The notes beneath the pieces are model-generated. The model was given only the letters and a program-made list of their open reading frames with translations, made no database searches and had not been told where the DNA came from. Made by a program: the position numbers and the translations under genes. Below, in pieces: positions 5,301-38,558 of a DNA stretch of 64,000 bases. Every line of letters starts with the position of its first letter. Within the stretch, counting starts at the first letter, position 1. The stretch comes from Sphyrna mokarran (Eukaryota), in contig JAGIQG010000009.1 of the NCBI GenBank assembly GCA_024679065.1, forward strand, positions 90,830,001 to 90,894,000, in the 5' to 3' direction.

Positions 5301-5449
5301 TTAAAAAAAGTAAGGGGGAGGTATGAGAAAGTGAGAGGGAGGAAAGAGGAAGCAAGAATGGAGAATGGGCAAGAGAGTGAGCAGGAGGGAAGAGAGAAAG
5401 GGGGAATAAAAAGGAAGATAGAGTGTGAAGAACAGGTAACAAGGTAGAG

Positions 5450-5785
5450 GAAAGAGAGCAGGCATATGAAGAAGGAGCAGGAATAGGCTATTCAACCCCT
5501 CGAGTCTGCTCTGCTATTTAATAATAGTAATCTTAAATCTTCATCCCTCTGATCACCGAAAACCTTTCATCCCTTTTTATCTCTGCCTTAAAAATATTCA
5601 AAGATTCGGCTTCCAGCATTTTTTCAGGAACAGAATTCCAAACAGTCACTACCCTCATTGAAAAATTGTCTCATCTCACTTATAAATGGGAAAACAGTGA
5701 CCCCAGTTCTAGATTCTTCCACAAGAGGAAACATGCTCTCCACATCCACCTATCAATACACCTGAGGATCTGATATATTTCAAAC
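5450..5785 (-). mobile_element. CR1 3' fragment
   Basis: Typical CR1 3' UTR and ORF2 end in reverse. Confidence 0.6.
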
Positions 5786-5989
5786 AATTGGGAAATAGTG
5801 TGAAAGAGTAAGAGGTCTTGGCATGAACTTCATGTGCTGCCTCTGTGTAGCCCCTGGTGGAGAGGGGAGAGACGTAGTTGACAGGGACTGCAAAGGAAGA
5901 CAGTAATTCACAGGATTTACCCAGTAACTGCTAATGCTGCAAACTGTTTATTTTCTATTGGTTGGACTCTAAGACATGGCACTGTGCCC

Positions 5990-6305
5990 TTTTTTTTGTT
6001 GTTTTTATTTCAATTCAATCAAATCAAATCCAATTCAGAGTCCTAACAAGTTGAGACATTCCCAATCCAAGCTGACAAGACAGGACTCTCACCTCCTGTC
6101 TTGGGCTTGAGCTACATGATCCAAGGTGATTGGAATAGGCATAGCTCCTCCTCCAAGGCTTCATCTCATTCGCATCTTAGTCAAAAGACCCAGATGTTGC
6201 TTTTAAAAATTGCTTCAATTGAAGCTGAAATGTAACCTAATGACTTCAACCATGCATAGCATGTCGATACTATACTTGATCTTAGCCAAAAGGCCAAGAA
6301 GCGAT
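5990..6305 (-). mobile_element. U2 snRNA-headed SINE-like retroposon (SINEU-like), copy 1
   Basis: 6266-6305 reverse-complements to U2 nt 1-40 (38/40). It has the same body, internal hairpin and A-tail as 19675-19983. No clear TSD. Confidence 0.85.
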
Positions 6306-6479
6306 TTAGCTAAAGATCGAAAGCTCACAATCTGCCAAACTTAGGGACTTTCTGTTACACAATTTCCCAGAAATAGCTCTTAGAAATCATCAGTCATGTC
6401 ACAGCCCTAAAGAAAATTAACAACTAACATTATTTGAGTGACAATTACATCATGTAAAACACCCTAATTCTCACATATA

Positions 6480-7140
6480 GAATCACTGGCACACACTTGC
6501 ACACATGCATGATAACTCACAATCATACAAATTTGCATGAATTTGTACACATTCATAAATCTACAGTCTCACATGCAAACACACAAATTGCCCATATACT
6601 TACACTCACAATCACAAACAAGCCATCTCACACTCAAAATATTCTGTCGCACACAATCATTTGCACCAAACACAATCTTCCAGTTATTTGCTAACACACA
6701 GATACATACAGACATCACACAAAATAAATCACACACTTAAACACACAAATCCACGCTCAGTCAGAGATACATACTAAAACACAATACACAATCATTCTCA
6801 AGTGTGTGCTATCAAATACTTAGGTCAGAATTTTCTGGCCATTCATGCTGACAGGATCTTCTGGTCCCAACAATGGCATTCCCCAGCTGTAAGTTCCCCA
6901 CCAGCAAGGGGTGCATTCAATGTGAAACTCTACTGACAACAACTGGACCGCCGCTGGTCAATACTGAGTTGCTTTTGGCATTGCGAAAGATGCGGCGGTT
7001 GTGCAGAAAATCCCGCCCTTAATTTAAGATACAGCCTCACATAGATGCACATACAATTACACATTCACATTCATACACATAAACTCAGAATATCACTCAT
7101 TCACATTAATGTATACATACACAACATAGCAATACATAGG
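6480..7140. repeat. (CA)-rich low-complexity tract interrupted by a MITE
   Basis: Imperfect ACAC/CACA runs. Confidence 0.75.
6823..7018. mobile_element. PIF/Harbinger-type MITE
   Basis: Imperfect TIRs GGTCAGAATTTTCTG / CAGAAAATCCCGCCC flanked by a TTA TSD (6820-6822, 7019-7021). Confidence 0.65.
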
Positions 7141-8420: not shown

Positions 8421-11400
8421 CTCTGGGACAGAATGTTTGGAAGTGCTGGTGGCTGAGTGTGAGTTTTTCAATTTGCTTTTTTTTCTCTTTCTTTTTGAGT
8501 GCTTTTTGCTGCTGTAGTTAGTCTGGGGCTAGCTGGGAAGGAAACCGGGGAGTATAAAAAGAAAGTGGCAGTAGACCGCAGGCAGCATCGGGAATGGGCA
8601 GGGGAGTGAGTAGGGAAGCAGAGTGAGAGATGTAGGGGCTTTGGCTCGCAGGGCCTGGGCTAGAGCAGGCTTAGTCACAGTGTGCTACTGGTTTTTCCAT
8701 TAGAATTCACGCCTCCAAAGGGCTCATGACAATGGCAGGGATTAAGGGAAGACGCCTCACCTGCGTACGGTGTCATATGTGGGAGTTCCTGGAGGCGAGA
8801 CCTCTCCCGAAAGTCCACATATGTGTCAAGTGTTTGGAGCTGCAGTGTCTGAGGGCTCGGGTCAAGCAACTAGAGCGCCAGTTGGAAGATGCATTTTTAG
8901 TCAGAGAGAACGAGGCAATCATGGAAGGGAGGCAGAATAAGGTGGCAGACCCGGAGCCTAAGTGGGGGGGACCTGACCCTTACAGGTGGATTACTGTCAG
9001 GAAGGGGAAAAAGGAGAGGGAAGACAGTCGAAAGACTTCCCCAGTGGCAGCCCCCCAAAATATCGAGGGCGGAGGGGTAAAAAACACAAGGCATGAGGAC
9101 CAGAGTACCTCAAAGGGGAGGAAAGGGGCTAAAAGGTGGGGGGTGGGGGGTGGGAGGGTTAAAGGAATAGATAGGCGCTTCTGTGGTCCAAGGCGGGACT
9201 CCAGGATGGTAGTTTGCCTCCCTGGAGCAGGGGTGCAAGACGTGTCTGACAGGGTAGAGGGCATTTTGAAGGGTGAGGGGCCCAGGCGGATGTGATTATT
9301 CACGTAGGAGAGAAGGATGTAGGAAGGAAGAGCAGGGAGGATATATGAAGGCAGTTCAGGGAGTTGGGGGGTAGGCTGAAGAGCAGGGCCTCGAAGGTGG
9401 CGATCTCAGGTCTGCTTCCAGGCGCGGGTAATAGTGGAGCCAGGAGAAATGAGATCCTACAGCTGAATGTGTGGCTGAAGGGCTGGTGTAGGGCAGAGGG
9501 TTTCATATTTGTGGATAACTGGGAAGTCTTTGTGAAAGAAGGGCACCTGTATAGAAGGGACGGGGAACACTTAAATGGGAAGGGTGTGAATATCTTAGCT
9601 GGGAGGTTAGCTGGAGTGTTTCAGCAGGATTTAAGCTAATATGGAGGGAGGGAGGGGCTGAGACCGATAGCTCAGTAGAGAGCGAGATGGGAGATAGAGT
9701 AAGCTTGGACGAGAAAAGATGCACCGGAGAGAAGGAGGTTCCGAGTGGTCTTGGAGGTCTGGAGTGTGTCTGTTTCAATGCGAGGAGCTTAACGGGAAAA
9801 ACGGATCAACTTAGGGCCTTAATGTTTGGGAGGAACTTGGACGTGGTTGCTGTGACGGAGACATGGTTAAAGGAAGGGGAGCAGTGGCAACTGAACATTC
9901 CTGGGTATAAGTGTGTCAGGCGTGACAGAGGAGGGTCCAGAAGAGGTGGAGGAGTGGTCTTGTTAGTTGAGGAGAGCATCACGGCGGTGCAGAGGGAGGA
10001 CAATACAGAGGAGTTAGGAGTGGAGTCGCTGTGGGTGGAGCTGAGTAATAGAAAGGGGGTGATTACTATGCTAGGGGTTTATTACACGCCATCCAACAGC
10101 CCGCGGGTAGTTGAAGAAGGCATATGTAAAGACATTTTGGATAGGTGCAGAAAGAACAGAGTCGTTATAGTGGGAGATTTTAATCTCCCTAGGGTGGATT
10201 GGAAAGTACCTAGAGCTGGGGCATGGCAGGAATTTGTAAAATGTGTACTGGAAGGATCGTTGGAGCAGTATGTGGCTAGCCCGACTAGAGAAGGGGCTAT
10301 GTTGGATTTAGTTCTGAGTAATGAACCAGGGCAGGTGGTTGATGTTGTAGTAGGGGAACACGTGGCTAACAGTGACCACAATTCTGTCTACTTTAGGATA
10401 CAGATGGAAAAGGATGCTTGTTGCCCTAGGGGCAGGGTGCTGAATTGGGGGAAGGCTAACTACGGTCGGATTATGCAGGAACTTAGGGAAACTGATTGGG
10501 AACGGTTGTTCGAGGGTAAGTCCACGCTAGGCATGTGGGACTCTTTCAAGGGAATACTGAAAATGTTGCACGATAAATATGTGCCGGCCAAGAGGAAAGA
10601 TGGGAAAGATAGGATTAGAGAGCCGTGGATTACTAGGGATATTGAGGACTTGGTTAGAAGAAAAGAGAGATGTATGATAGGTCAAAGCAGCTGGGAACCG
10701 AGACAGCGTTGGAGGAATTTAGAGAGAGTAGGAGGGAGCTCAAACAGCGAGTTAAAGGGCAGAAAGGGGGCATGAAATGATTTTGGCAGATAAGATTAAT
10801 GAAAATCCAAAGGCTTTTTACTCCTATGTTAGGAATAAAAGGGTGGTTAGTGGAAAAATCGGACCTCTTAGGGACGGAGGAGGGGAACTGTGCTCAGAGC
10901 CTGAGGGAATGGCGGGGATACTGAATGAATACTTTGCGTCGGTATTCACGAAGGAGAGGGGCTTGTTGACAGCTCCTGTGTCTGAGGGAGCTGTGGACCA
11001 GTTGAGGGAAATATCCATACCGAGGGAGGAAGTGTTAGAGCTTCTAGGTAGCATTAAAACTCCAGGGCCTGATGGCATTCATCCCAGGCTGCTTAGGGAG
11101 GTGCGAGGTGAAATTGCTGGGCCTCTGACACAACTCTTTGTCTCTTCCTTGGACACAGGTGAGGTCCCAGAGGACTGGAGAATGGCTAATGTTGTACCGT
11201 TGTTTAAAAAGGGTAGTAGGGATAACCCTGGAAATTATAGGCCGGTGAGTTTGACGTCAGTGGTAGGGAAGCAGTTGGAGGGAATTCTTAGAGATAGGAT
11301 GTATAGGCACTTAGAGCGATGAGATCTGATTCGGGATACGCAGCATGAATTTGTTAAGGGGAGGTCGTGCCTTACGAATCTGGTAGAATTTTTTGAGGAG

Positions 11401-13067
11401 GTGACGAAAACGGTCGACGAAGGGCAAGCCGTTGATGTCATCTATATGGATTTTAGTAAGGTGTTTGACAAAGTCCCTCATGGGAGGTTAGTTGAGAAGG
11501 CCAAGACTAATGGTATATAAGGACAGGTAGCTAGATAGATAAGTAACCGGCTTGGTAATAGGAGACAGAGAGTAATAGTGGAAGGGTGTTTTTCTAGCTG
11601 GCGGTCGGTCACTAGTGGTGTGCCGCAAGGCTCGGTACTGGGACCTCTTCTATTTGTAATATATATAAATGACTTGGAAGAGGGAGTAAGTGGGGTGATC
11701 AGCAAGTTTGCAAACGATACAAAGATGGCTGGACTTGTGGATAGTGAGGAGCATTGTCAGGCGATGGAGCAGGACATAGATAGGCTGGTAGCTTGGGCAG
11801 ACAGATGGCAGATGGAATTCAATTCTGATAAATGTGAGGTGTTGCATTTTGGGAGAAAGAATGTAGGGGGTGGGTATATGATAAAGGGAAGACCTATTAA
11901 GAGTATAGAAACGCAGAGGGACCTGGGGGTGCAAGTGAACAAGTCTCTGAAGGTGGCAAAGCAAGTGGAGAAGGTTGTGAAGAAAGCATATAGTATGTTA
12001 GCCTTTATAGGAAGGAGTATAGAGTACAAGAGCTGGCCTTTAATGTTGCAGTTGTATAAAACGCTGGTTAGACCTCATTTGGAATGTTGCGTCCAGTTCT
12101 GGTCGCCTTACTACCGGAAGGACGTGGAGACTCTGGAGAGAGTGCAGAGGAGGTTTACCAGGATTCTGTCTGGTATGGAAGGTCTGAGTTACGAGGAGAG
12201 ATTAGGCAAATTGGGACTGTTTTCCTTAGAAAGATGTAGACTTAGAGAAGATCTGATAGAGGTGTACAAGATTATGAGGGGTATAGATAGAGTAAACAGG
12301 GTTAAGCTTTTTCCTAGGATGGACTCAAATAGCACGAGGGGTCACGGGCTTAGGGTGAGGAGGGTAAGGTATAATTTGGATGCTAGAGGGAGTTTTTTCA
12401 CACAGAGGGTGGTGGGGGTATGGAATGCGCTGCCAAGTAAAGTGGTGGAGGCAGGTACTCTGGAGTTATTTAAGAAATACTTAGATGGGCACATGAACAG
12501 AATGGGAATGGAAGGGTATAGAAAACTGATTTAAACTAGGGATCATGAGCCTTTGGAGTCCCTGGGAAGTGTGTAAATAGATGATATTGATGTATTTGTT
12601 TTTATCCTACAGGTGCTTTGGTCCACCTTGTTGTCTAACGAGGGGCATACACACAAAGGGTCATGAGAGGGCTGCTCTTGGATCTTTTTCGAAAGTATCC
12701 TAGTGCTTCACGTCGTTAGTGTACACTTGACCTGGACCATTTGATGAGCAATACGACAACTCAGTGACTATCGCTGTGCTGTGCAGATACATGGATTTGG
12801 GCCTGCGTCTGTGGGAGTTTGTGCATTCTCCCCGTGCTTGCGTGGGTTTTCTCCGGGAGCTCCGGTTTCCTCCCACATCCCAAAGATGTGCTCTTAGGCT
12901 AATTGGCAAAACAAATTCTCCCTAAATTGTCTCAAATTTTAATTCATAGATCTATAAACATAGATAGCGATCGTGGGTAGAGGTGGGAACACCGGGGTGG
13001 CAGCGCGGGCTCGTTGGGCCGAAGGGCCTGTTTCCCGTGCTGTTTTGTTCTTCGTTCTTTGTTCTTT
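8421..13067 (+). mobile_element. Near full-length CR1 LINE (ORF1 Zn-finger/coiled-coil plus SGNH esterase; ORF2 APE-RT) with SINE-containing 3' UTR
   Basis: ORF1 pieces at 8726-9639 (CxxC..CxxC, leucine heptads, CLPGA, HLNGKG). ORF2 pieces at 9687-12534 (VAVTETW, GDFN, SDH, GVPQGSVLGP, FANDTK) with frameshifts and stops. The tail is (GTTCTTT)n. Candidate TSD TTGAG at 8416-8420 / 13066-13070. It is inserted in an older LINE 3' fragment (8230-8420, 13070-13150). Confidence 0.93.
9687..12534 (+). pseudogene. Disrupted CR1 ORF2 (endonuclease-reverse transcriptase)
   Basis: Three ORF-track segments (9687-10775, 10777-11322, 11578-12534) are separated by a frameshift and in-frame stops. The catalytic FADD motif reads FAND. 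Confidence 0.9.
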
Positions 13068-13916
13068 GAGGAGGTGCTGCCCAAGGAGTCTTGTGAGTTC
13101 CTGCAATGCATCTTGTAAATGGTACACAGGGCTGCTACTGAGTGTGCCATACTGATAGGGTGGTCAGTATTAGTTACTACAATAGTTGTCTATAAAGTGC
13201 CCCTTAACTGGCCTAACATTTTCTATTGATGCAAGACAGTAAGAACTATCCGAATTTCATGATTTCAGTCACATTTTTCGATGGTTCCCAGAGCAGGAAA
13301 ATTGGCCATCGGAAGTTTGCTTTCTCGGACATTTGCCATGCAATCCTTACTTGGGAATTGAACGGAGCGGTGATCTCCCCGGCTCCCTCCCACCTCCCCA
13401 TCCAATGCCCTGGACCTGTATTATTGTTGTCAGTACGATTCCCGTTCTGTCCACACTGTGTCAGGAAATTGCATCCAAAGAATTTAAGCAGAGTCGAGCA
13501 AAGGTTGGAATTAGGTGCGGTGGGGTCGGGGGTGGGAGGGCGGCGGGGTGGGCGGGGGTGGTGACAGTGAAAACGCTTGGAGACGACAATGTTGTATATT
13601 GGGAGGAATTTGCAAGAGCAGAGGGGTGCAGAATGTATGATTTTGAGCAGGAACTTTTGAGTCGAGTGCCGGTTGGAGAGCGGAGCTAACTGTGGGTCTG
13701 TCTGAGTTTCTGGTGACTGGGGCTGCTTTGACTTGCCGGGGATTCCCAGGAAGAGCAAGTGTCTCCCATACACAGCAAAGCTCCATTCGAGCAGAATAGG
13801 TGTGGAAATTCCCCGGTACTCTCCCCGACTGCTGGAGCAGGAAAGAAATGGGCATCAGCACACACAAATTGTTCAATGTGTCTAAGAGGAGTGGAGCGGA
13901 CAATGTAAACACTAGC

Positions 13917-17242: not shown

Positions 17243-19674
17243 TAAAGTGTTCACAGGGTCAAACTGTGCAATGTTACTGACTCTAGGAGTGAGTTCTTGG
17301 GATTGAACTCTCAGTGTAACAGGAAGAAATAAAACAGTCAAACTGCAATATATTTCATGAGTGAGTTCATAGAGTCAGACTGTGTGCGGTATAAGTACAG
17401 TCTGAAAATTGGTTCACAAGGTCAGATTGTGTGCAGTGAAATTATAATCTGAGAATTTATTCACATGATTAGACTACATGTAGCATGTCTAAAATTTAGT
17501 TGTAAGTTCACAAGGTCAAACCATGTGCAATGTACCTATAGTCTGAAGCAGTTTGACCCTGCAAACTCACGTCCAGACTGAACTCATACTACACACAGCC
17601 TGAACCTGCAAACTCACTCATGGACTATTGTATAAGTGTGCACAGTCTGACCCTATGATTGCACTCCCAGACTTCAGTTACAATGCACACAGTCTGACCA
17701 AGTGAACTCATAGGGTCAGGCTGTGTGGAGTGTAATTACAGTCTGGGAGTGAGTTCACAAGTTCAGATTGTGCACTACAACTATAGTCTGGGACTGAATT
17801 CATTGGTCAAACTGTTTATAGTATAAATACAGTCTAGGACTGAGATCATAGGGTCACAGGGTGACAGCAATCTGAGATGAGTTCACAGGGTCAGACTATG
17901 TGCAGTCTAATCTACACATCTCAGGACACTAAGGGCAATTTTTTAGCATGGCCAATCAACCTAACCCACACATCTTTGGACTTCACAGTGAGTGAAGTTC
18001 AAGAGTCAGTTTATGTGCCGTGTAACTACAGTCTGGGAAAGGGTCAAACTGTCATCAGTGAACTACATCTGGGAGTGAATTCATAGGGTCATATTGAGTG
18101 CAGGATATCTACAGTCTGTGACTGAATTCACAAGTCAGACTGTTTACAGTATAACAACAGTCTGGGATTGAGATCACAATGTCATAGAGTAACTGCTGCC
18201 TGTGAGTGACTTCAGTCTGGGATTGAGTTCACAGGATTAGACTGTGCACTGTAACTGCAGTCTGAAAGTGAGTATACAAGATGAGACTGTGCAGTATAAC
18301 TACAGTCTGGCAGTGACTTTACAGGATGAGATGGTACAGTCTAACTACAGTCCAGGGGAAAGCTCACAAGGTCAGACTCATCAATGTGACTGCAGTCTTG
18401 GATTCAGATCAAAGCATCAAACTGCAGCACATTGATAGTCTGAGAGTGAATTCACATGGTCAGATAGTGCATTGCAACTGCAGTCTGGGAGTGAGTACAC
18501 AAGATGAGACTGTGTGCAGTATAACTACAATCTAAGATGAGTTTGCAGGGTCAGATTGTGTGCAGTGTATCTACAGTTTGGGAGTCAATTTGCAGGGTCA
18601 GACTGTATGCAGTGTAAGTACAGTTTAGGGAAGAGTTCACAGGATTTTCATACAATCAGACTCATCAGTGTGACTGCAGTCTTGGAGCGAAATCAAACTG
18701 CAGCGTATCTATAATCTGGGGGTGAAATTACAGGGTCAGACTGTGTACAGTGTAACTACAGTCTGAGTGTATTCTGTTAATGTGATGACAGGGTCAGACT
18801 GTGCACAGTGCAATTACAATTACTAGAGTCTAGGAGACAATTCACAGGGTCACACTTTGTGTTATTATCCACAGTCAGAAAGTGGGTTTATGGGGTCAGA
18901 CTGTGTGCCGTTTAACTAAAGCCTGGAAGTCAGTTCACAGGATCAGATTGTACAGTGTAATTCAATCTGTGAGTGTGCTCTGTTAATGTGATGACAGGGT
19001 CAGACTGTATGTAATAGTAATGAGATAATAGGATCAGACTCTTACAGTATAACTACAGCCTGGTAATGAGTTAACAGGGTCAGATTGTGTACAGTTTTAC
19101 TACAATCCAGAGTGAGTTCACAGGTTCAGACTCTATGCAGTGTATCTAGTCTTGGAGTGAGTTCACAGAGTCCGACTGTGTGCAGTGTAACTACAGTCTG
19201 GGGGAGTATTCACAAGGTCAGACTGTCATCAGTGCAACTATAGTTTGGGAGTGAGTTCAAAGTGTCAAACTGCAGTGTATCTACAGTCTGAGAGTGAATT
19301 CAGAGCATCAGACTGTGTTGTTTCTAAAGCCTAGGAGACAATTCACAGAGTCAGACTTTGTGCTATAATCTACAGTCAGCAAATCAATTAACGGGGTCAG
19401 ATTGTGCAATGCAACTGCAATCTGAGAGTGAGTTCACAGGACAGACTGTGCACGGTATAACTACAGTTTAGGAGACAGTTCATAGGGTCAGACTGTGTGC
19501 AGTATAACTACAGACTGGTTATAGGTTCACAGAGTCAACTACAGTCTGGAAGCAATATTGAAAAGTCACAGTGTAGCACATCCTGGATGTGAATTCACAG
19601 AGACAGACTGTGTGCAGTATAACCACTGTTTTGGCCACAGTTTTGCAGAGTCAGACATTGTTCAGTGTAACTAT

Positions 19675-19983
19675 ATCGCTTCTCGGCCTTTTGGCTAAGA
19701 TTAAGTGTAGTATCAATATGCTACGCAAGGTTGAAGTCATTAGGTTACATTTCAGCTTCATTGGAAGCAATTTTTCAAAATGGCGTCATGGCCTTTTGGC
19801 TAAGATGCAAATGAGATCAAGCTTTGGAGAAGGAGCTATGCTTATTCCAATCAGCTTGGATCATGTAGCTCAAGCCCAAGACAGGTGAGAGCCCTGTCTT
19901 GTCAGCTTGGATTGGGAATGTCTCAACTTGTTGAGACTCTGAATTGGACTTGATTTGATTGAATTGGAATAAGAATAAAAAAA
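19675..19983 (+). mobile_element. U2 snRNA-headed SINE-like retroposon (SINEU-like), copy 2
   Basis: 19675-19714 matches U2 snRNA nt 1-40 (39/40 vs recalled vertebrate U2). A second U2 fragment GGCCTTTTGGCTAAGAT lies at 19790-19806. The body is shared with 5990-6305. It has an A-rich tail and TSD AACTAT (19669-19674 / 19984-19989) interrupting a satellite unit. Confidence 0.88.
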
Positions 19984-20224
19984 AACTATAGTCTGTGTGT
20001 GAGATCACAGGGTCAAACTATGGGCACTAAAACTACAGGCTGGGAGTTCACAGGCTCGTACTATATAGTTTAGCTGCAGTTAGCGGCTGAATTCACACAT
20101 CTGGCTTTATATAGTATAACTATAGTCCTGGAGTGAGTTCACTGTGTGCAGTATGACTACAGTCTGGGAGCAAGTTCACTGGGCCAGAGTGTGTGCTCTA
20201 TAAACAACAGTGTTGGAGTGAGTT

Positions 20225-20570
20225 AGGGTAGTTCAGTGCTACAGTGATTAGCACTATTGCCTCACAGCTCCAGGGATCCAGGTTCAATTGGACGACTGTT
20301 TGTGTTGAGTTTGCAAGTTTTCCCTGTGTCTCCGTTGGTTTCCTATGGGTGCTTTGGTTTTCTGCCACAGTCCAAAGATGTGCAGGTTAGGTATATTGGC
20401 CATGCTAAATTGCCCCTTAATGTCCAAAGATGAGATTAGCGGGTAAATGTGTGGTGTTGCGGGGTTAGGATTGGGAATGATCATGGGTATGATGCCCTGT
20501 CAGAAAATCAATGCAGAAACAATGAGCCAAATGGCCCTCTTCTATACCATAGAAATTCTATGGGGAATCT
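20225..20570 (+). mobile_element. HE1-like tRNA/V-domain SINE
   Basis: tRNA head (CAGTGATTAGCAC..GGTTCAA), V-domain and CR1-type tail. Confidence 0.75.
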
Positions 20571-21014
20571 GTTTTCAGTGTAGCTATGCTTTGGGACTGA
20601 CTTCACAGGATCATAGAGTAACTACAGACTGGAGTGAGTTCACAGGGTCAGACTGTGTGCAGTATAATTACAGTCTGCGAGAGAGTTCACTGGGTCAAAG
20701 AACCTGCAGTCCGCGAGTGAGTTAACAGGGCCGGAATGTTTATATGTTAGTATACCTACAGTCAGGAACTGAGTTCACAAGGTCACAGAGAAACTAATTC
20801 TGGATGAGAGTTCGCAGGTTAAGACTATGTGCAGTGTAACTACAGTCTGGGGGTGAGTTCACAGCATCAACTTGTGTGCAATATAATCACAATCTTGGTG
20901 TGATTCACAAGGTCAGACTATGTACTGTAACTACAGAGTGGAGCAGGTGAGTGAAATCTTCCCTCTTTTCCTCTGAAATACTACTGTCTAAAAAGGCCTA
21001 GCATGTAACTTAGT

Positions 21015-23454: not shown

Positions 23455-24572
23455 CTGTGGATGGAAGCATAGAACAAAACATCATTAGTCTGTGGCCAAA
23501 ACCTACAGCTAGCCACTTGGTCTTCATTTTGCAACATGGAAATTACCAGTTGGAAGATCAAGGTACATTTAGCTTTCTCACCACCTTTTTGGTAGTCACA
23601 TAATAATGAAACTGTTAACTAATTAGCAATTAATCACTAAAGAATAGTCTCCATGAAACTCACTGCGGTAGTGAACATTGGATCCATATGTTGAGGCATT
23701 TATAGTGAGTCCAGCTGATGATACACCTTTCGGGCATCTAATTCTCCTGAACCAAATCCCAGATGGGTTTGGCTGAGCGCCAAGGCTCTTATATTGATTA
23801 TCTCAGCAGGGGTTTGTTCTCATAGGATAAACTGGAGTGTTTGCTTTCATTATTATAACTTTCAAAGTTGTCAATAAGTTATTCTTTGAATTTTTCTTTG
23901 GAAACATCTCAGTGTTTACCTGGATGAGATTACAAGGCATGATGTCCAGTAAAGCTTTTTTCTAAATATTGATACAACTGACTGATAGTTTCACATGATT
24001 GTAAAAATAATTACTTTTAAATTAAGTTTCTGAATGTGCATGTTTTCCCTCAGTGTTTTATATTTGTCATTGCTATTATAAAGCTTATTAGTTCTTTACA
24101 CTGTGCATAGTGGGCAACAGGATAGAGAGGTGGGCAAAAGCATGAAGGACAGAGGAACCAAATATTTTTAATACAATTGTGGCTAAGGCCCAACAAATAG
24201 AAGCAAGCCTTCTAACCATTCCATTGACAAATCTAATTTCTCCCTGATTTGAAAATGGTTGGCACTTTAAACTCATCTTATTTACAGCAAATGATGTTCT
24301 ATAAAAAAGGGGCATGGCCTCCTTCCCTTTGTTGCAACACACTCAACTGAAGGGTTTAGGAGTGCACTGCCCGACAGTTCTTACTAGGCCAGAGTTAGGC
24401 AAGACAGGAATGAAAAATGTTAGATAAATAGGGATAGAGTGGCAATCCAACACACCGATTGTCACTTTGTAGAGGTTTTGGATTAAATTTACAATTGATG
24501 ATCTGGTACCGTATATGTGGAAACAGCTTGTGTAGATGCAAATTAGTCATGACACACAGACAGATTACTTAC

Positions 24573-24845
24573 CAAGCTGAATCTCTTTGAAATCACCATT
24601 GTGTTCCACCCTACAGGAATACTTCAATCCATCCTTGGGGATGATTTCCACAAATTTGGTAAGTTTGAAGCTCCAATCAGCCTCAAAGGAGAGGTCAGAC
24701 TGGTTGGCATTGGGTATGATTTTTCCATTCTCCACCAGCTCCAGCTTGATGTTGGGAGGGGTGAAGTCTTTGGCATGGCAAAGCAGCACATTGCTTTTGC
24801 CTTCCTCAATTGGTCTGTAGGTGTACACTTGGACATTTGGAGAAC
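24573..24845 (-). CDS. B2M: Beta-2-microglobulin exon 2 (Ig C1-set domain)
   Basis: Acceptor cttag|GT TCT CCA and donor CTT G|gtaagt bound 273 nt, phase 1-1. It encodes (S)SPNVQVYTYRPIEEGKSNVLLCHAKDFTPPNIKLELVENGKIIPNANQSDLSFEADWSFKLTKFVEIIPKDGLKYSCRVEHNGDFKEIQL. B2M hallmarks are PxVQVY, N-x-L-x-C, SDLSF, DWSF and YSCRVEH. Confidence 0.97.
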
Positions 24846-33277: not shown

Positions 33278-34070
33278 GTGACAATACTGTGCCTTTACAA
33301 AGAGTATTTGTGTCACAATTCTAAAGAGAATGTTTTAAACTTCACCTTGGATTACAGTGCTGATTGTCTGCAACTCACATCCCACATGCTGAATATGCAG
33401 AAGAATGGAGTTAATGGGGTGTTTGTTATAATCTGAGCTAATGCATTTTTGTTTTTTTTGGGCTGTCCCCTGGGATTTCAGTATTGGGTTTAATTAAGTT
33501 GAATGACCAGAAGACAAAGAAATATGAATCGGCAGAGCTAGGGTTATAGGGAGAAAAGTATGCACTTGCTGTTTGAATTTGAAAGCAGTAGTTCTTTCTC
33601 TTTGGAAACTGAAGCCTGGGACCTATTAGAAAATAGGTATTTCTCCCTGTGGTTTGCAAAAGGCAAGAGATGTTTTCTCCTTTTCTCTGGAATTCTGTTC
33701 TTTCTCTGTAGGCTGTTGTCTGAGAATCAAAAGACTCTCTTTCTACATTTCTGTCCAAAGATATTAAAAGGATGGTTCTGAAGAAGAGTTTATAGCTAGG
33801 TGGGATACTGCTTTAATTGGAACTAATAGAGGCAGCAAGCAATTATACTTTGTCACTGTATTTCAATTGGTAAAGGTTATGCTAATTCTTTTTGTTATAG
33901 TTAAACTGTATTGTTAAATAAAGTTGGTTTTAATAAAAGTTTCCAAGTGGATCAATAGAATCACAGCTGGAGTGAAACACTTTATGCTCACTCTAATGAC
34001 AAAATCAAAAATTGTTAGGTCTAGACAAACTTTAAAATATAACTTGGAATTTCTGATCTGGTCCTTAACC
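33278..34070 (+). mobile_element. Probable solo LTR inserted into a CR1 fragment
   Basis: Begins TGTGACA, has AATAAA signals near 33917-33937 and ends ..CCTTAAC. The flanking CR1 3' sequence (33190-33277, 34070-34235) joins up when it is removed. Confidence 0.5.
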
Positions 34071-34759
34071 AGTTCAACTGAGATATTCAAAAGTAAATTG
34101 GATTTCTATCTGAAAATAAAGAATATGCAACGTTACAGAGAATATGGAAGAGGAGTAGGGTTACATAGAATGCTCTTTTGTAAGTTAGTGCAGGCTCAAT
34201 GGGACAAATGGCCTTCTTGTGCAATCTGTGATTCTTCAGTCACATCAGTTGTGAACTACCTTAAACCTCACAGACCTTCTCTGTGTCTTCTTACAAAATT
34301 GTATAAAGACAAAGATTTGATTTGCCATTGTTTCATACTGAGGTTCACTGACCATCAAAACGCAGGGTACTACAAAGGAAATGAGTGATTAGCTGCTTGC
34401 ATTTGCAATGGACTGCAAAAAAAGTTGATTTTTCTCTGTGACCAAATCCAGATTTACTTCCTTGCTTATGTCACAGATGCGTTTGGGAAACAAATTAACT
34501 GAGTGCAAATGTACAAGGAAGGAACACAAACATTCTGCAAAGGAATGATTACATCACATCAGTTACAGAATCATACAATCATACAGCATTGAGAAGGCCC
34601 TTCAGCCCACTGAGTTCACACTGAGACATGAGAAACACCTGAACTTCCATATTAATTGCATTCAATGAAGACAATTGTATTTTTTTTATTCATTCATGGG
34701 ATGTGGGCATCGTCAGGCCAGCATTTATTGTCCATCCCTAATTGCCTTCAAATAAAAGT

Positions 34760-37700
34760 CAAACACATTGCCATGGATTTGCTGTTACATGAATGCAAAA
34801 GTGAGTAAGGACAGATTTTCTTCTCTAAATTCGAGAGGTTGAGGAGGATATAGGCAGGAGTAACAAAGAGATTGTAACTCCTAAAAGTGATAATTGGGTA
34901 ACTATTAGGAAGAGGGGTAAGAAGCAATCGGGGAGACAATCCCCTGGGGCTGTTCCCCTCCAAAATAAATTTTCTGTCTTGGAGGCTACAGTTGAGGAAG
35001 AATCAACTGGAGCTGACCAAAGGGAGCAGGTCTCTGGGGGTGAGCCTGCTGAGAATGCTCAGGTGGGTGGGGGGAATAAGAGATTAGGCCTAGTTATAGG
35101 AGACTCCATAGTTAGAGGGACAGATAGGAGGGTAAATAGTAATAAACGGGACTCAGGGCTGGTGTGTTGCCTCCCAGGGGCTGGGGTCCAGGATGTCGCA
35201 GATCGGGTTTTTAAGATTCTTAAGGGTGAGGGGAGTCAGCCCCAAGTCATAGTTCATGTGGGGACACATGATGTAGGTAGGACAAGGGAAGGGGATATTA
35301 AACAGAAATTTATGGAGTTAGGGTGGAAGCTTAGGTCCATAACAGGCAGAGTGGTTATCTCTGGACTCTTGCCTGTGCCAAGGGATAGTTTAGAGAAGAA
35401 CAGAGAAAGGGAAAGTTTGAACTCATGGCTGCGTGGATGGTGCAGGAGGGAGGGGTTCAGGTTCCTTAACAATTGGGACTCATTCTGGGATAGGTGGGAC
35501 CTCTTCAAGAGAGATGGTCTACACCTGAACCAGAGGGGGACTAATATCTTGGGGGGAAAATTTGCTAAGGCTATGATGGGAGCTTTAAACTGATTCGGGG
35601 GGGGTGGTGGGATCCTAAGTAGTTGGGGTGCTGAGAGGGATGAGAGTAAGGGGGTTATAGAAGAGAGTTGTAAAACACAGCGGCATACGGGTGGGGTGGG
35701 GCATGGTTTGAAATGCGTATACTTTAATGCAAGGAGTATTCGCAATAAGGGGGAGGAACTTGCAGCTTGGACCAGTACCTGGAACTTCGATGTTGTGGCC
35801 ATTTCAGAGACTTGGGTAGAGCAGGGACAGGAATGGATGTTGCAGGTTCCGGGGTACAAATGCTTTAGTCGGAGTAGAGAAGGAGGTAGAAGGGGGGGAG
35901 GAGTGGCATTATTGGTCAAAGACTGTATCACGGTGATAGAAAAGAAGTTTGATGAGGACTTGTCTGTTGAGGTAGTATGGGCTGAGATTAGAAACAGGAG
36001 AGGAGAGGTCACCCTGTTGGGAGTCTTTTACAGACCTCCTAATAGTTCTAGAGAGGTTGAGGAAAGGATTGCAAAGTCAATTCTGATTAGGAGTGAAAGT
36101 AGTAGGGTAATTGTGATGGGGGACTTTAACTTTGCTAATATTGATTGGAATAGCTATAGCTCTAGCTCGTTAGAGGGGTCAGTTTTCGTACAGAGTGTGC
36201 AGGAAGGTTTTTTGACTCAGTATGTAGATAGGCCAACTAGAGGTGAGGCTACATTGGATTTGGTGCTGGGCAATGAGCCAGACCAGGTGTTAGGCTTGGA
36301 AGTTGGTGAACATTTTGGTGATAGTGACCACAATTCGGTTACGTTCACCTTAGTGATGGATAGGGATAGGCATGAAGCTGGGGGCAGTAGTTATAGCTGG
36401 GGGAAGGGTAATTATGAGGCCATCAGGAGAGAATTAGGGTGCATAGATTGGACTAGGAAACTACAGGGACTGGGAACATCTGGAATGTGGTGCTTATTCA
36501 AGGAGCAGCTGCTGCGAGTCCTTGATAAGTATGTCCCTGTCAGGCAGGGAGGAAATGGTCGAGTAAGAGAGCCTTGGTGTACGAAAAAAGTTGATTTGCT
36601 GGTTAAGAAGAAAAAGGAGGCTTATGTCAGGATGAGGCTTGAAGGCTCAGTTAGTGCAATGGATAGCTATAGATTAGCCAGGAAGGAGCTAAAAAGTGAA
36701 TTGAGGAGAGCTAAGAGGGGACACGAGAAGATGTTGGCTGATAGGATTAAGGAGAATCCTAAAGCTTTCTTTCGATATGTTAAGAATAGAACATTGGTTA
36801 GGGCAAGATTAGGGCCACTCAGACAGCAGTGGGAAGTTGTGCGTGGAGCCTGAAGAGATTGGTGAGGCACTGAATAAATATTTCTCTTCGGTATTCACGC
36901 AGAGTGCTGGAAATGTAGCTATGGAGAACACTGAGGTACAGGGTTGCAAATTGGGAAGTATTGTAGTAGATAGGGAGGATGTGTTAGAAATTCTCGAGGG
37001 TTTGAAGTTGGATAAGTCCCCTGGGCCGGACGGGATTTACCTAGGATTCTCTGGGAGGCAAGAGAGGAGATTGCAGAGCCTCTGGCTCTGATCTTCAGGT
37101 CCTCGTTGGTTACGGGTGTGGTTCCGGAGGACTGGAGGATAGCGAATGTGGTCCCATTGTTTAAGAAGGGGAAGAGAGACCTTCCAGGGAATTATAGGCC
37201 AGTGAGTCTTACTTCTGTTGTGGGCAAGGTATTGGAGAGAATTATTAGGGATAGGATTTATAGTTATTTAGAGAGAAATGAATTGATTGGGGATAGTCAG
37301 CATGGTTTCGTGAAGGGTAGGTCATGCCTTACTAACCTCATTGAGTTTTTTGAGAAAGTGACCAAAGAGGTGGATGGGGGTAAGGCGGTTGATGTAGTAT
37401 ATATGGACTTTAGTAAGGCGTTTGATAAGGTGGCCCATGGAAGACTTCTACAGAAAATGCAGATGTGTGGAATAGAGGGTGATTTAGCTAATTGGATTAG
37501 GAATTGGCTGGCAGATAGAAGACAGAGGGTGGTGGTTGATGGGAGATATTCATCGTGGAGTTCGGTGACAAGTGGTGTGCCTCAGGGGTCTGTTTTGGGG
37601 CCCCTGCTGTTTGTAATTTTTATAAATGATCTGGATGAGGGTATTGAGGGATGGATCAGTAAATTTGCAGATGATACTAAAGTTGGTGGTGTGGTAGATA

Positions 37701-38558
37701 GTGAAGAGGGGTGTTTTAGTTTACAGAGTGACTTGGACAAGTTGCAGAGCTGGGCCGAGAGGTGGCAAATGGAGTTTAATGTGGAAAAGTGTGAGGTAAT
37801 GCACTTTGGCAGGAACAATAAATGTGTAGAGTATAGGGCTAATGGTAGGGCTCTTAATAGTGTTGAGGAACAGAAGGATCTTGGTGTATGTGTCAATAGA
37901 TCCCTGAAAGTAGGCAGTCAAGTGGATAAAGTTGTTAAGAAGGCATATGGAGTCTTAGCTTTTATTGGTAGGGGGATTGAATTAGGAGCCGCAGCATCAT
38001 GTTGCAACTGTACAAAACTCTAGTGCGGCCGCACTTGGAGTATTGTGTGCAGTTCTGGTCCCCACATTATAAGAAAGATGTGGAGGCATTGGAGAGGGTA
38101 CAGAGGAGGTTTACCAGGATGTTGCCTGGTATGGAGGGCAGGTCCTATGAAGAGAGGTTGAAGGATTTGAGGTTGTTTTCGTTAGAAAGGAGGCGGCTAA
38201 GAGGGGATCTTATTGAAGCATATAAGATGATTAGAGGTTTAGATAGGGTGGACAGTGATAGCCTTTTTCCTAGGATGGAGAAAGCTAGCACGAGGGGACA
38301 CAGCTTTAAATTAAGGGGTATGAGTTATAGGACGGATATCAGAGGTAGGTTCTTTACTCAAAGAGTGATTAGGGAGTGGAATGCCCTGCCTGCAGCTGTT
38401 GTAGATGCGCCAAGTTTGGTGGCGTTTAAGAGGTTAATTGATAAGTATATGGAAGAGAAGGGAATGGTTTAGTTTGGAGGGGCATTGCTTTTTATTTTGG
38501 TCGGCACAACATCGAAGGCCGAAGGGCCTGTTCTGTGCTGTATTGTTCTATGTTCTAT
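34760..38558 (+). mobile_element. CR1 LINE, 5'-truncated within ORF1 (esterase) with nearly intact ORF2
   Basis: 34979-35593 encodes an SGNH esterase (GDSIVRG, HVGTHD, DGLHLN). 35696-38472 encodes APE-RT with FADDTK and about 3 frameshifts. The short 3' UTR ends (TTCTATG)n. Confidence 0.93.

What the first reader, a model, noticed from the sequence alone, without database searches (positions are those of the whole stretch)
19669..19989. U2 snRNA-headed, poly(A)-tailed retroposon (SINEU-like) in a shark, with two independent copies
Seen: this element and 5990-6305 (minus) both start exactly at U2 snRNA nt 1 and follow U2 to nt 40, including the branch-point-pairing GTAGTA. Both then switch at the same point to a shared non-U2 body of ~270 nt that ends in an A-tail. 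This copy has a clean TSD (AACTAT) that splits a satellite unit, so it is a retrotransposed insertion and not a segmental duplication. Established: most SINE heads derive from tRNA, 7SL or 5S; U1/U2-headed SINEU families are described from crocodilians; U2 has external (PSE/DSE) promoters; Keno (Tx1) and Utopia retrotransposons target U2 genes close to this position. Inference: this is an independent snRNA-headed SINE family in elasmobranchs. It may be a non-autonomous element whose master copy sits in a U2 gene and is transcribed from the U2 promoter. The poly(A) tail and TSD point to an L1/Tx1-type partner and not the CR1s here, which have microsatellite tails. Two copies in 64 kb suggest a high genomic copy number.
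Basis: partly seen in the sequence, partly recalled or inferred. Interest (0 to 1): 0.85.

Follow-up and report, generated by a model that had tools for sequence, protein, structure and literature searches.

The report
U2-headed poly(A) retroposon in a shark
Two separate copies of a roughly 310-base mobile element begin with the first 40 bases of the U2 spliceosomal RNA and end in an A-tail, a rare kind of short retroposon so far described only in crocodilians.

Summary
Copy A (19675-19985, +) and copy B (5992-6305, -) are 88.5% identical over 311/314 nt. Both pass Rfam's U2 threshold (52.3 and 47.8 bits against 46), but only model nt 1-40 match well. Both leave U2 at the same base, and both end in AATAAA plus an A-run.

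Removing 19675-19989 restores a 47-bp satellite unit without an indel, so A has a 4-6 bp TSD. B has no clear TSD. The "non-U2 body" holds a second, decayed U2 5' module at element nt 106-144.

My reading is a SINEU-like non-autonomous retroposon, probably moved by a Tx1-type LINE. The head ends at U2 nt 40, and Keno and Utopia LINEs insert at U2 nt 38|39 (PMC4640811). That favours a master copy sitting in a U2 gene and read from its promoter. This step is inferred.

The scan flagged this family before on other DNA of the same genome: nine unchecked first-reader notes. No paper in the held library reports it in sharks. Repbase and Dfam could not be searched.

The parts
19669..19674 (+). 5' copy of the target-site duplication of copy A (6 nt at most; the last 4 are certain)
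   Evidence: The empty-site reconstruction scores best when 19675-19989 is removed. Sequence read.
19675..19714 (+). Copy A, outer head: U2 snRNA nt 1-40, including stem-loop I and the branch-point-pairing GUAGUA
   Evidence: Rfam RF00004 scores 52.3 bits against a gathering score of 46. 38 of 40 letters equal the consensus, and posterior probability is high over model nt 1-40.
19715..19779 (+). Copy A, 65-nt spacer of unknown origin. It ends in T5CAAA, which Rfam laid on the U2 Sm-site position.
   Evidence: Rfam on 19715-19789 alone gives only two snoRNA matches at E 3.3 and 8. It shows no likeness to the rest of the element beyond chance: score 16 against shuffles of 14.3 +/- 2.3.
19780..19818 (+). 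Copy A, inner decayed U2 5' module (about U2 nt 1-40). It holds a 17-nt run identical to outer head nt 11-27, and ATGCAAAT.
   Evidence: blastn self-hit of 17/17. Local alignment score 35 against shuffles of 16.0 +/- 2.5, maximum 29. Octamer at element nt 131.
19819..19973 (+). Copy A, 3' body with two hairpins. This is the part best kept between the two copies.
   Evidence: The longest stretch with at most 1 difference is 78 columns (permutation P 0.008). Hairpins (z-scores -1.9 and -0.5). No Rfam match at E <= 10 on 19807-19985.
19974..19985 (+). Copy A, AATAAA signal running into a 9-nt A-tail
   Evidence: AATAAA at element nt 300 of 311. Sequence read.
19984..19989 (+). 3' copy of the target-site duplication of copy A. 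Its first two A cannot be told from the tail.
5992..6305 (-). Copy B, same architecture: U2 nt 1-40 head, spacer, inner U2-like module, 3' body, AATAAA and A-tail. No clear TSD.
   Evidence: 88.5% identical to A over 314 columns. Rfam RF00004 scores 47.8 bits against 46. Alignment.

Best explanation
This is a short, non-coding, poly(A)-tailed retroposon of the SINEU type. A and B are two separate insertions of one family.

The source RNA began exactly at the U2 transcription start. It carried U2 nt 1-40 fused to a fixed body, which itself begins, 65 nt further in, with an older decayed U2 5' module. A LINE reverse transcriptase copied this RNA into new sites by target-primed reverse transcription from the A-tail. 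The LINE is most likely of the Tx1 clade (inferred).

The head was most likely gained because a master copy sat in a U2 gene at the site that Keno and Utopia LINEs use (U2 nt 38|39). There it would have been read from the gene's own upstream promoter. This happened at least twice in the lineage (inferred).

Shown here: the anatomy, the shared junction, the insertion of A with its TSD, and the absence of a usable Pol III promoter. Inferred: the partner, the U2-gene master and the transcription.
For: - Both copies have U2 nt 1-40, pass Rfam's threshold, and end at the same base.
- Body, junction and tail are shared at 88.5% identity.
- The 3' flanks are unrelated: 16/60 and 14/60.
- A splits a satellite unit with a 4-6 bp TSD.
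- The element is non-coding. The longest ATG ORF is 56 aa. The open sense frame has no protein relatives: one search was blank within its length filter, and one search gave 0 hits at E <= 0.001 among 1.84 billion representatives.
- Pol III transcription is unlikely. T4, T5 and T4 runs lie at element nt 15, 97 and 120. No A or B box matches better than 2 mismatches (1 for the short B-box form). AATAAA sits at the tail.
- The inner U2 module ends at the same U2 position as the outer one, followed by AA in both.
- The outer head, rebuilt from the two copies, has no change shared by both against the U2 consensus (apart from model position 3, which Rfam scores as positive). The inner module carries changes shared by both copies. 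So the outer head is a later, fresh acquisition.
- Utopia's 3' flanking U2 starts at nt 39, and the paper says the flank is the same for Keno (PMC4640811, section 6).
- Crocodilian SINEU show recurrent 5' addition of U2 pieces, poly(A) tails and Tx1 partners, and Tx1-11_Crp itself has a U2 head (PMC4494074, Results and Discussion read).
- Chondrichthyans have Tx1 but only fragments of L1 (PMC8455134, passages).
- Differences between A and B are unevenly spread (permutation P 0.019 and 0.008). The inner stem-loop keeps its pairing through a change on both sides. Both fit distinct source copies under some constraint.
Against: - Only two copies were seen directly.
Two metagenome scans and one viral scan with body 22-mers found nothing.
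- B has no clear TSD.
- Neither of the 2 copies is followed by U2 nt 39 onwards, and no Tx1 or Keno LINE was found in the window. The two LINEs present look CR1-like.
- The head reaches nt 40, not nt 38. A 2-bp duplication or a chance TC has to be assumed.
- snRNA promoters normally couple to 3'-box processing, not polyadenylation (established knowledge). An AATAAA plus A-tail on a U2-promoter transcript therefore needs explaining.
- Fold z-scores are modest, from -0.5 to -2.4.
- With two sequences, the compensatory changes are anecdotes.
Confidence: 0.6

Rival explanations
1. Template-switch origin. A LINE reverse transcriptase that was copying the body RNA jumped onto a mature U2 snRNA within its single-stranded branch-point region and ran to its 5' end. 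The chimeric copy landed near a promoter and became the master. The U2 gene itself was never involved.
For: Kojima 2015 favours template switch for the 5' additions in SINEU, and cites human U1/U2 chimeras made by L1 (PMC4494074 Discussion). A jump onto mature U2 also gives a 5' end exactly at nt 1. Neither copy lies in a U2 gene.
Against: Two separate acquisitions, outer and inner, end at the same U2 position. That position lies within 2 nt of the known LINE target site in U2. A free jump has no reason to land there twice. A master without the U2 promoter should give daughters with 5' extensions rather than starts at nt 1, although 2 copies are few.
Confidence: 0.25
2. There is no family. A single chimeric retrocopy was made once, and the second copy arose by a local DNA duplication within this 14-kb stretch.
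For: Only two copies were verified, they lie 13 kb apart, and the 36 nt upstream agree at 21 of 36 in register.
Against: - The likeness stops exactly at the A-tail on the 3' side (16/60 and 14/60).
- Upstream identity (about 58%) is far below that of the element (88.5%).
- A has its own TSD inside a satellite unit.
- The two copies are in opposite orientation.
- Nine unchecked first-reader notes report like elements on other DNA of this genome. These are leads only.
Confidence: 0.05
3. They are variant U2 snRNA genes or plain U2 pseudogenes, as an Rfam-based annotation would call them.
For: Both pass the RF00004 gathering score with an alignment that spans the whole model. A U-rich stretch lies at about the position of the Sm site.
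Against: Only model nt 1-40 align with high confidence. The 3' 179 nt alone give no Rfam match at E <= 10, and the spacer gives only noise. The A-tail, the AATAAA and the TSD mark a retroposon. The shared non-U2 body rules out a plain U2 retropseudogene.
Confidence: 0.03
4. It is a Pol III-transcribed SINE that uses box-like motifs inside the U2-derived parts.
For: Weak box-A-like matches lie at element nt 107-133, and short box-B-like matches at nt 56, 141 and 194.
Against: Every match has 2 mismatches (1 for the short form). T4, T5 and T4 runs at nt 15, 97 and 120 would stop Pol III before the body. Kojima 2015 makes the same argument for SINEU.
Confidence: 0.04

Closest known systems
SINEU-1 of crocodilians (Kojima 2015, PMC4494074)
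   Same: - A short U2-derived piece at the 5' end.
- More than one U-snRNA module stacked by later 5' addition.
- A 3' half of unknown origin.
- A poly(A) tail and short TSDs.
- Internal oligo-T, and no recognisable promoter.
   Different: - The host is a shark. The paper states that no SINEU was detected outside crocodilians.
- The head here starts exactly at U2 nt 1 and ends at nt 40 in both copies.
- Body homology could not be compared, because no Repbase or Dfam was on hand.
- No Mariner target preference was seen. A sits in a 47-bp satellite.
Keno (Tx1 clade) and Utopia, the U2-gene-targeting LINEs (PMC4640811)
   Same: Their insertion site in U2 (3' flank starts at nt 39) lies within 2 nt of where the U2 head of this element ends. 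A LINE-borne element inserted there and read from the U2 start would carry just such a head.
   Different: This element encodes nothing. Neither copy is flanked by the rest of U2. Both lie at non-U2 sites.
snRNA-LINE/Alu chimeric retrocopies made by L1 template switching in humans (as cited in PMC4494074; the original papers were not read)
   Same: An snRNA piece sits at the 5' end of a poly(A) retrocopy flanked by a TSD.
   Different: Those are one-off chimeras, each with its own junction. Here 2 of 2 copies share one junction and one body, so the chimera itself is what multiplies.
SVA subfamily with MAST2 5' transduction, and R2 co-transcription with 28S rRNA (as discussed in PMC4494074)
   Same: A retroposon without its own promoter that borrows one from the host gene it sits in.
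   Different: Here the borrowed promoter would be an snRNA-type promoter of a multicopy RNA gene. This is inferred, not shown.

Membership tests
SINEU (snRNA-headed SINE, Kojima 2015) | The 5' region derives from a U1 or U2 snRNA gene. | tested here: met
   RF00004 scores 52.3 and 47.8 bits against a gathering score of 46. 38/40 and 37/40 letters equal the consensus over nt 1-40.
SINEU (snRNA-headed SINE, Kojima 2015) | Short (under 500 bp) and non-coding. | tested here: met
   311 and 314 nt. Longest ATG ORF in A is 56 aa. No protein relatives of the open frame.
SINEU (snRNA-headed SINE, Kojima 2015) | A 3' poly(A) tail. | tested here: met
   AATAAA plus an A-run ends both copies.
SINEU (snRNA-headed SINE, Kojima 2015) | A multicopy family that keeps one structure, that is a retrotransposition unit and not a sum of independent chimeras. 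| tested here: inconclusive
   2 of 2 window copies share the junction and the body. There is no third copy in 64 kb. Earlier notes are unchecked leads.
SINEU (snRNA-headed SINE, Kojima 2015) | No internal Pol III promoter, and oligo-T inside. | tested here: met
   T4, T5 and T4 runs. Only box matches with 2 mismatches, or 1 for the short form.
SINEU (snRNA-headed SINE, Kojima 2015) | Sequence homology with the bodies of SINEU-1, -2 or -3. | not testable with these tools
   No Repbase or Dfam library, and no crocodilian sequence, was on hand.
SINEU (snRNA-headed SINE, Kojima 2015) | Mobilised by Tx1-clade LINEs, shown by shared targets or shared heads. | not testable with these tools
   The window holds no Tx1 LINE. 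Its two LINEs have APE, RT and GDSL domains, and one ends in (TTTGTTC)n. The rest of the genome could not be searched.
Genuine U2 snRNA gene (RF00004) | U2 over its full length, with Sm site and stem-loops III and IV. | tested here: not met
   Confident alignment covers only model nt 1-40. 19807-19985 alone gives no match at E <= 10.
Keno or Utopia insertion in a U2 gene | Followed on the 3' side by U2 from nt 39 on. | tested here: not met
   0 of 2. After the tail of A the satellite unit resumes. After the tail of B comes unrelated sequence.
One-off template-switch chimeric retrocopy | Each copy has its own junction between the snRNA part and the 3' part. | tested here: not met
   Both copies leave U2 at the same base and share the sequence that follows.

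The most novel reading that the evidence does not exclude
The family's masters live inside U2 snRNA genes at the Keno/Utopia target site and use the gene's external snRNA promoter. Every daughter therefore starts at U2 nt 1 and carries U2 nt 1-40, and the lineage gets a fresh head each time a copy re-enters a U2 gene. That would account for the two stacked modules.

If so, snRNA-headed SINEs are by-products of U2-targeting Tx1 LINEs. The question that Kojima 2015 left open, how SINEU are transcribed and born, would then have a testable answer.

A bolder add-on is that the U2 5' stem-loop and the U-rich site about 95 nt in let the RNA ride the snRNA export and import route.
Probability: 0.35. 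Interest if true: 0.75.

Novelty: new member of a known kind. Interest (0 to 1): 0.6.

Why it matters
- SINEs with snRNA heads are in print only for crocodilians. A shark family would show that the type arose more than once, or is far older than thought.
- The head ends at the very site that U2-targeting LINEs cut. This gives a concrete and checkable account of how such heads arise and how promoter-less SINEs get transcribed.
- There is a practical point. Both copies pass Rfam's U2 threshold, so Rfam-based annotation of shark genomes will count such elements as U2 genes.

Tried and rejected
Tried without result:
- Laying reads or contigs of four runs on copy B with its flanks, to get copy number, 5' ends and presence in other species.
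- Exact scans with two 22-mers of the body: metagenome contigs twice and viral contigs once, all 0 hits.
- Findings look-up by sequence.
- Protein searches with the open sense frame of the body, to test for a LINE ORF2 C-terminus. One was blank within its length filter of about 26-84 aa. The other gave 0 hits at E <= 0.001.

Considered and dropped:
- That the 3' part of the inner module is an internally deleted U2 (Sm site plus stem-loops III and IV, as in SINEU-3). This rested on a by-eye likeness to a recalled U2 sequence. Rfam on 19807-19985 gives nothing at E <= 10.
- That modules 1 and 2 are a tandem dimer. Beyond the U2-like part their likeness is at chance.
- That the octamer ATGCAAAT in A is an ancestral enhancer site. 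B has CG where A has CA, so A's form may be CpG decay. An earlier unchecked note reports an octamer in another copy, so this stays open.
- That B's flanks are satellite. Local alignment scores lie within the shuffles, and sliding identity is not clearly above the control.

Literature. Six answered searches looked for snRNA-headed SINEs in sharks. None listed a paper, by title or abstract, that reports an snRNA-headed SINE in cartilaginous fish. Searches were format errors that I corrected. One search looked up PDB codes. Supplementary files were not opened, so the repeat tables of shark genome papers may list such a class. Repbase and Dfam could not be searched.

What I saw of each paper:
- PMC4494074: outline, Results, Discussion and passages.
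- PMC4640811: section 6 and passages.
- PMC5753468, PMC5786205, PMC5381603, PMC8455134 and PMC8236899: passages only.
Full report
**What is there**

Reading both places and aligning them shows two copies of one element. Copy A is at 19675-19985 on the + strand. Copy B is at 6305-5992 on the - strand. blastn gives 88.5% identity over 314 columns. Neither blastn nor an nhmmer profile of the two bodies finds a third copy or fragment in the 64 kb.

Rfam's U2 model (RF00004) passes its gathering score on exactly these two places and nowhere else in the window: 52.3 and 47.8 bits against 46. The confident part of both alignments is model nt 1-40. A has the consensus letter at 38 of 40 positions and B at 37 of 40. 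At each of the three positions where A and B differ, one of them keeps the consensus letter. The common ancestor therefore had no change against the consensus in nt 1-40, apart from model position 3, which both share and Rfam scores as positive. The next model positions are aligned to gaps in both copies, so both leave U2 at the same base.

The rest of Rfam's "full-length" alignment is filler. The last 179 nt of A alone match no Rfam family at E <= 10. The 75 nt after the head give only two snoRNA matches at E 3.3 and 8.

**Anatomy** (element numbering of A)

- nt 1-40: U2 nt 1-40.
- nt 41-105: a spacer of unknown origin that ends in T5CAAA.
- nt 106-144: a second, decayed U2 5' module.
- nt 145-299: a 3' body with two hairpins.
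- nt 300-311: AATAAA running into the A-tail.

The inner module holds a 17-nt run identical to head nt 11-27. It aligns to head nt 11-42 with a score of 35, against 16.0 +/- 2.5 (maximum 29) for 500 shuffles. It ends at the same U2 position as the outer head, and AA follows in both. Beyond the U2-like parts the two halves are not alike: score 16 against shuffles of 14.3 +/- 2.3. The inner module carries changes shared by A and B, while the outer head does not. The outer head is therefore a later, fresh acquisition from real U2 and not a copy of the inner one.

**Is it an insertion?**

A sits in an array of ~47-bp satellite units. Among 21 candidate right-hand boundaries, the empty site aligns best to neighbouring units, without an indel at the junction, when 19675-19989 is taken out. 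CTAT is therefore duplicated for certain, and AACTAT at most, because the two A cannot be told from the tail.

B has no convincing TSD (by eye). The 3' flanks of A and B are unrelated: 16/60 and 14/60.

The 36 nt upstream agree in register at 21 of 36. For the last 35 nt the count is 20, and the chance of that is 1e-4 to 6e-4 from 200,000 random 35-mers of the window. Further upstream the agreement falls to 1-5 of 12. A's flank is plainly satellite. B's flank is not significantly satellite-like. I leave this open between a target preference, a 5'-transduced stretch in B, and chance.

**Coding and promoters**

The longest ATG ORF in A is 56 aa. One sense frame is open for 49 codons in A and 50 in B. 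All amino-acid differences between the two (read by eye from the two translations) change the residue. The frame has no protein relatives: one search was blank within its length filter, and one search gave 0 hits at E <= 0.001 among 1.84 billion representatives.

No Pol III box A or B matches better than two mismatches (one for the short B-box form). T4, T5 and T4 runs lie at nt 15, 97 and 120. Pol III could hardly make the full RNA. Kojima uses the same argument for SINEU.

**Differences between the copies**

In the body there are 29 differences in 269 aligned columns. Of these, 20 are transitions and 9 are transversions, and 3 are of CpG type. They are unevenly spread. Ten fall in one 30-column window at the spacer/inner-module border (permutation P 0.019). 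One stretch of 78 columns in the 3' body holds at most one difference (P 0.008).

The inner stem-loop keeps its pairing through a change on both sides, and so does one further predicted pair. Fold z-scores are modest, from -0.5 to -2.4. With two sequences this is only a hint that A and B come from different source copies whose 3' body was under constraint.

**Host**

An Ig-domain exon at 24571-24840 (-) matches three PDB beta-2-microglobulin chains at 155 bits, against 96 or less for all others. It is about 78% identical to the best-scoring of the three, 9ch4_B (69 of 89, counted by eye). One of the three sequences belongs to 6LUO/6LUP, and 6LUP is nurse shark (PMC8236899, passages). The window therefore comes from a shark or close kin, not the nurse shark itself.

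**How it most likely works**

The A-tail, the AATAAA and the TSD point to target-primed reverse transcription by a LINE that accepts A-tails. The window's two LINEs are not that kind. One has APE and RT domains and a (TTTGTTC)n tail. The other has a GDSL-type ORF1 with APE and RT domains, and its tail was not identified. A whale shark genome paper states that chondrichthyans hold only fragments of L1 but do have Tx1 (PMC8455134, passages). Crocodilian SINEU are assigned to Tx1 partners (PMC4494074).

The Utopia paper states that U2 sequence downstream of Utopia insertions starts at nt 39, and that the 3' flank is the same for Keno of the Tx1 clade (PMC4640811, section 6). The head here ends at nt 40, and so does the older inner module. 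The reading that best fits is this. A non-autonomous Tx1-type element sat in a U2 gene at that site and was read from the U2 promoter, starting at nt 1. Its RNA then spread to other sites. Re-entry into a U2 gene later gave the fresh outer head. The 2-nt overshoot needs a 2-bp duplication or a chance TC.

This part is inference. Neither copy lies in a U2 gene, no partner was seen, and no RNA data could be had.

The main rival is a template switch onto mature U2 snRNA, which Kojima prefers for SINEU. It explains the start at nt 1. It does not explain why two acquisitions both ended at the LINE target site.

**Comparison with what is known**

The closest match is SINEU-1. It shares a short U2 head, stacked modules from repeated 5' addition, a 3' half of unknown origin, a poly(A) tail, short TSDs and no recognisable promoter. 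That paper says no SINEU was detected outside crocodilians.

Six literature searches listed no paper, by title or abstract, that reports such an element in cartilaginous fish. Repbase, Dfam and supplementary repeat tables could not be checked. It may therefore already be catalogued, which would remove the novelty only.

**Family size**

I could not measure it. The look-up of sequencing runs listed one near-complete holder, with 0.87 of the words.

The scan itself noted like elements before on other DNA of this genome. There are nine first-reader notes, one of them titled as three copies, among 350 windows. These are unchecked leads. They fit a family of at least thousands of copies, but I give them no weight as evidence.

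**Verdict**

It is a new member of a known kind (SINEU-like). It also carries a mechanistic clue that can be tested: the head's boundary coincides with the U2-targeting LINE site.

Noticed in passing
window 19639-19674 and the 36 nt upstream of copy B: The 36 nt just upstream of the two copies agree in register at 21 of 36. For 20 of the last 35 the nominal P is 1e-4 to 6e-4. Everything further out, and the 3' flanks, are at background. This could be a target preference, a 5' transduction or chance.
   Followed up: partly
window 17374-20710: An array of diverged ~47-bp satellite units (65-81% matches by TRF). Copy A interrupts one unit. The unit around the insertion point has short runs that resemble the U2 sequence around the Keno/Utopia site (by eye only).
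   Followed up: partly
window 24571-24840 (-): The Ig-domain exon of beta-2-microglobulin. Its best PDB matches are three chains at 155 bits, one of which is the nurse shark protein of 6LUP, and it is about 78% identical to the top one.
   Followed up: partly
window 9687-13068 (+): A LINE with APE and RT domains in broken frames, ending in (TTTGTTC)n at 13044-13068.
   Followed up: no
window 33924-38469 (+): A second LINE with a GDSL-lipase-like ORF1 followed by APE and RT domains (RVT_1, 131.8 bits). It looks CR1-like and rather intact.
   Followed up: no
window 19805-19812: ATGCAAAT (the octamer of snRNA gene enhancers) lies in the inner U2 module of A. B has CG in place of CA there, so it may be CpG decay in A.
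   Followed up: partly
window 5400-6900: Fourteen runs hold 7-14% of the sampled 31-mers of this stretch: ten from five other coded organisms and four with no organism given.
   Followed up: no
window 19675-19873 and 6114-6305: Both retroposon copies pass Rfam's curated U2 threshold, so Rfam-based annotation would list them as U2 snRNA genes.
   Followed up: yes
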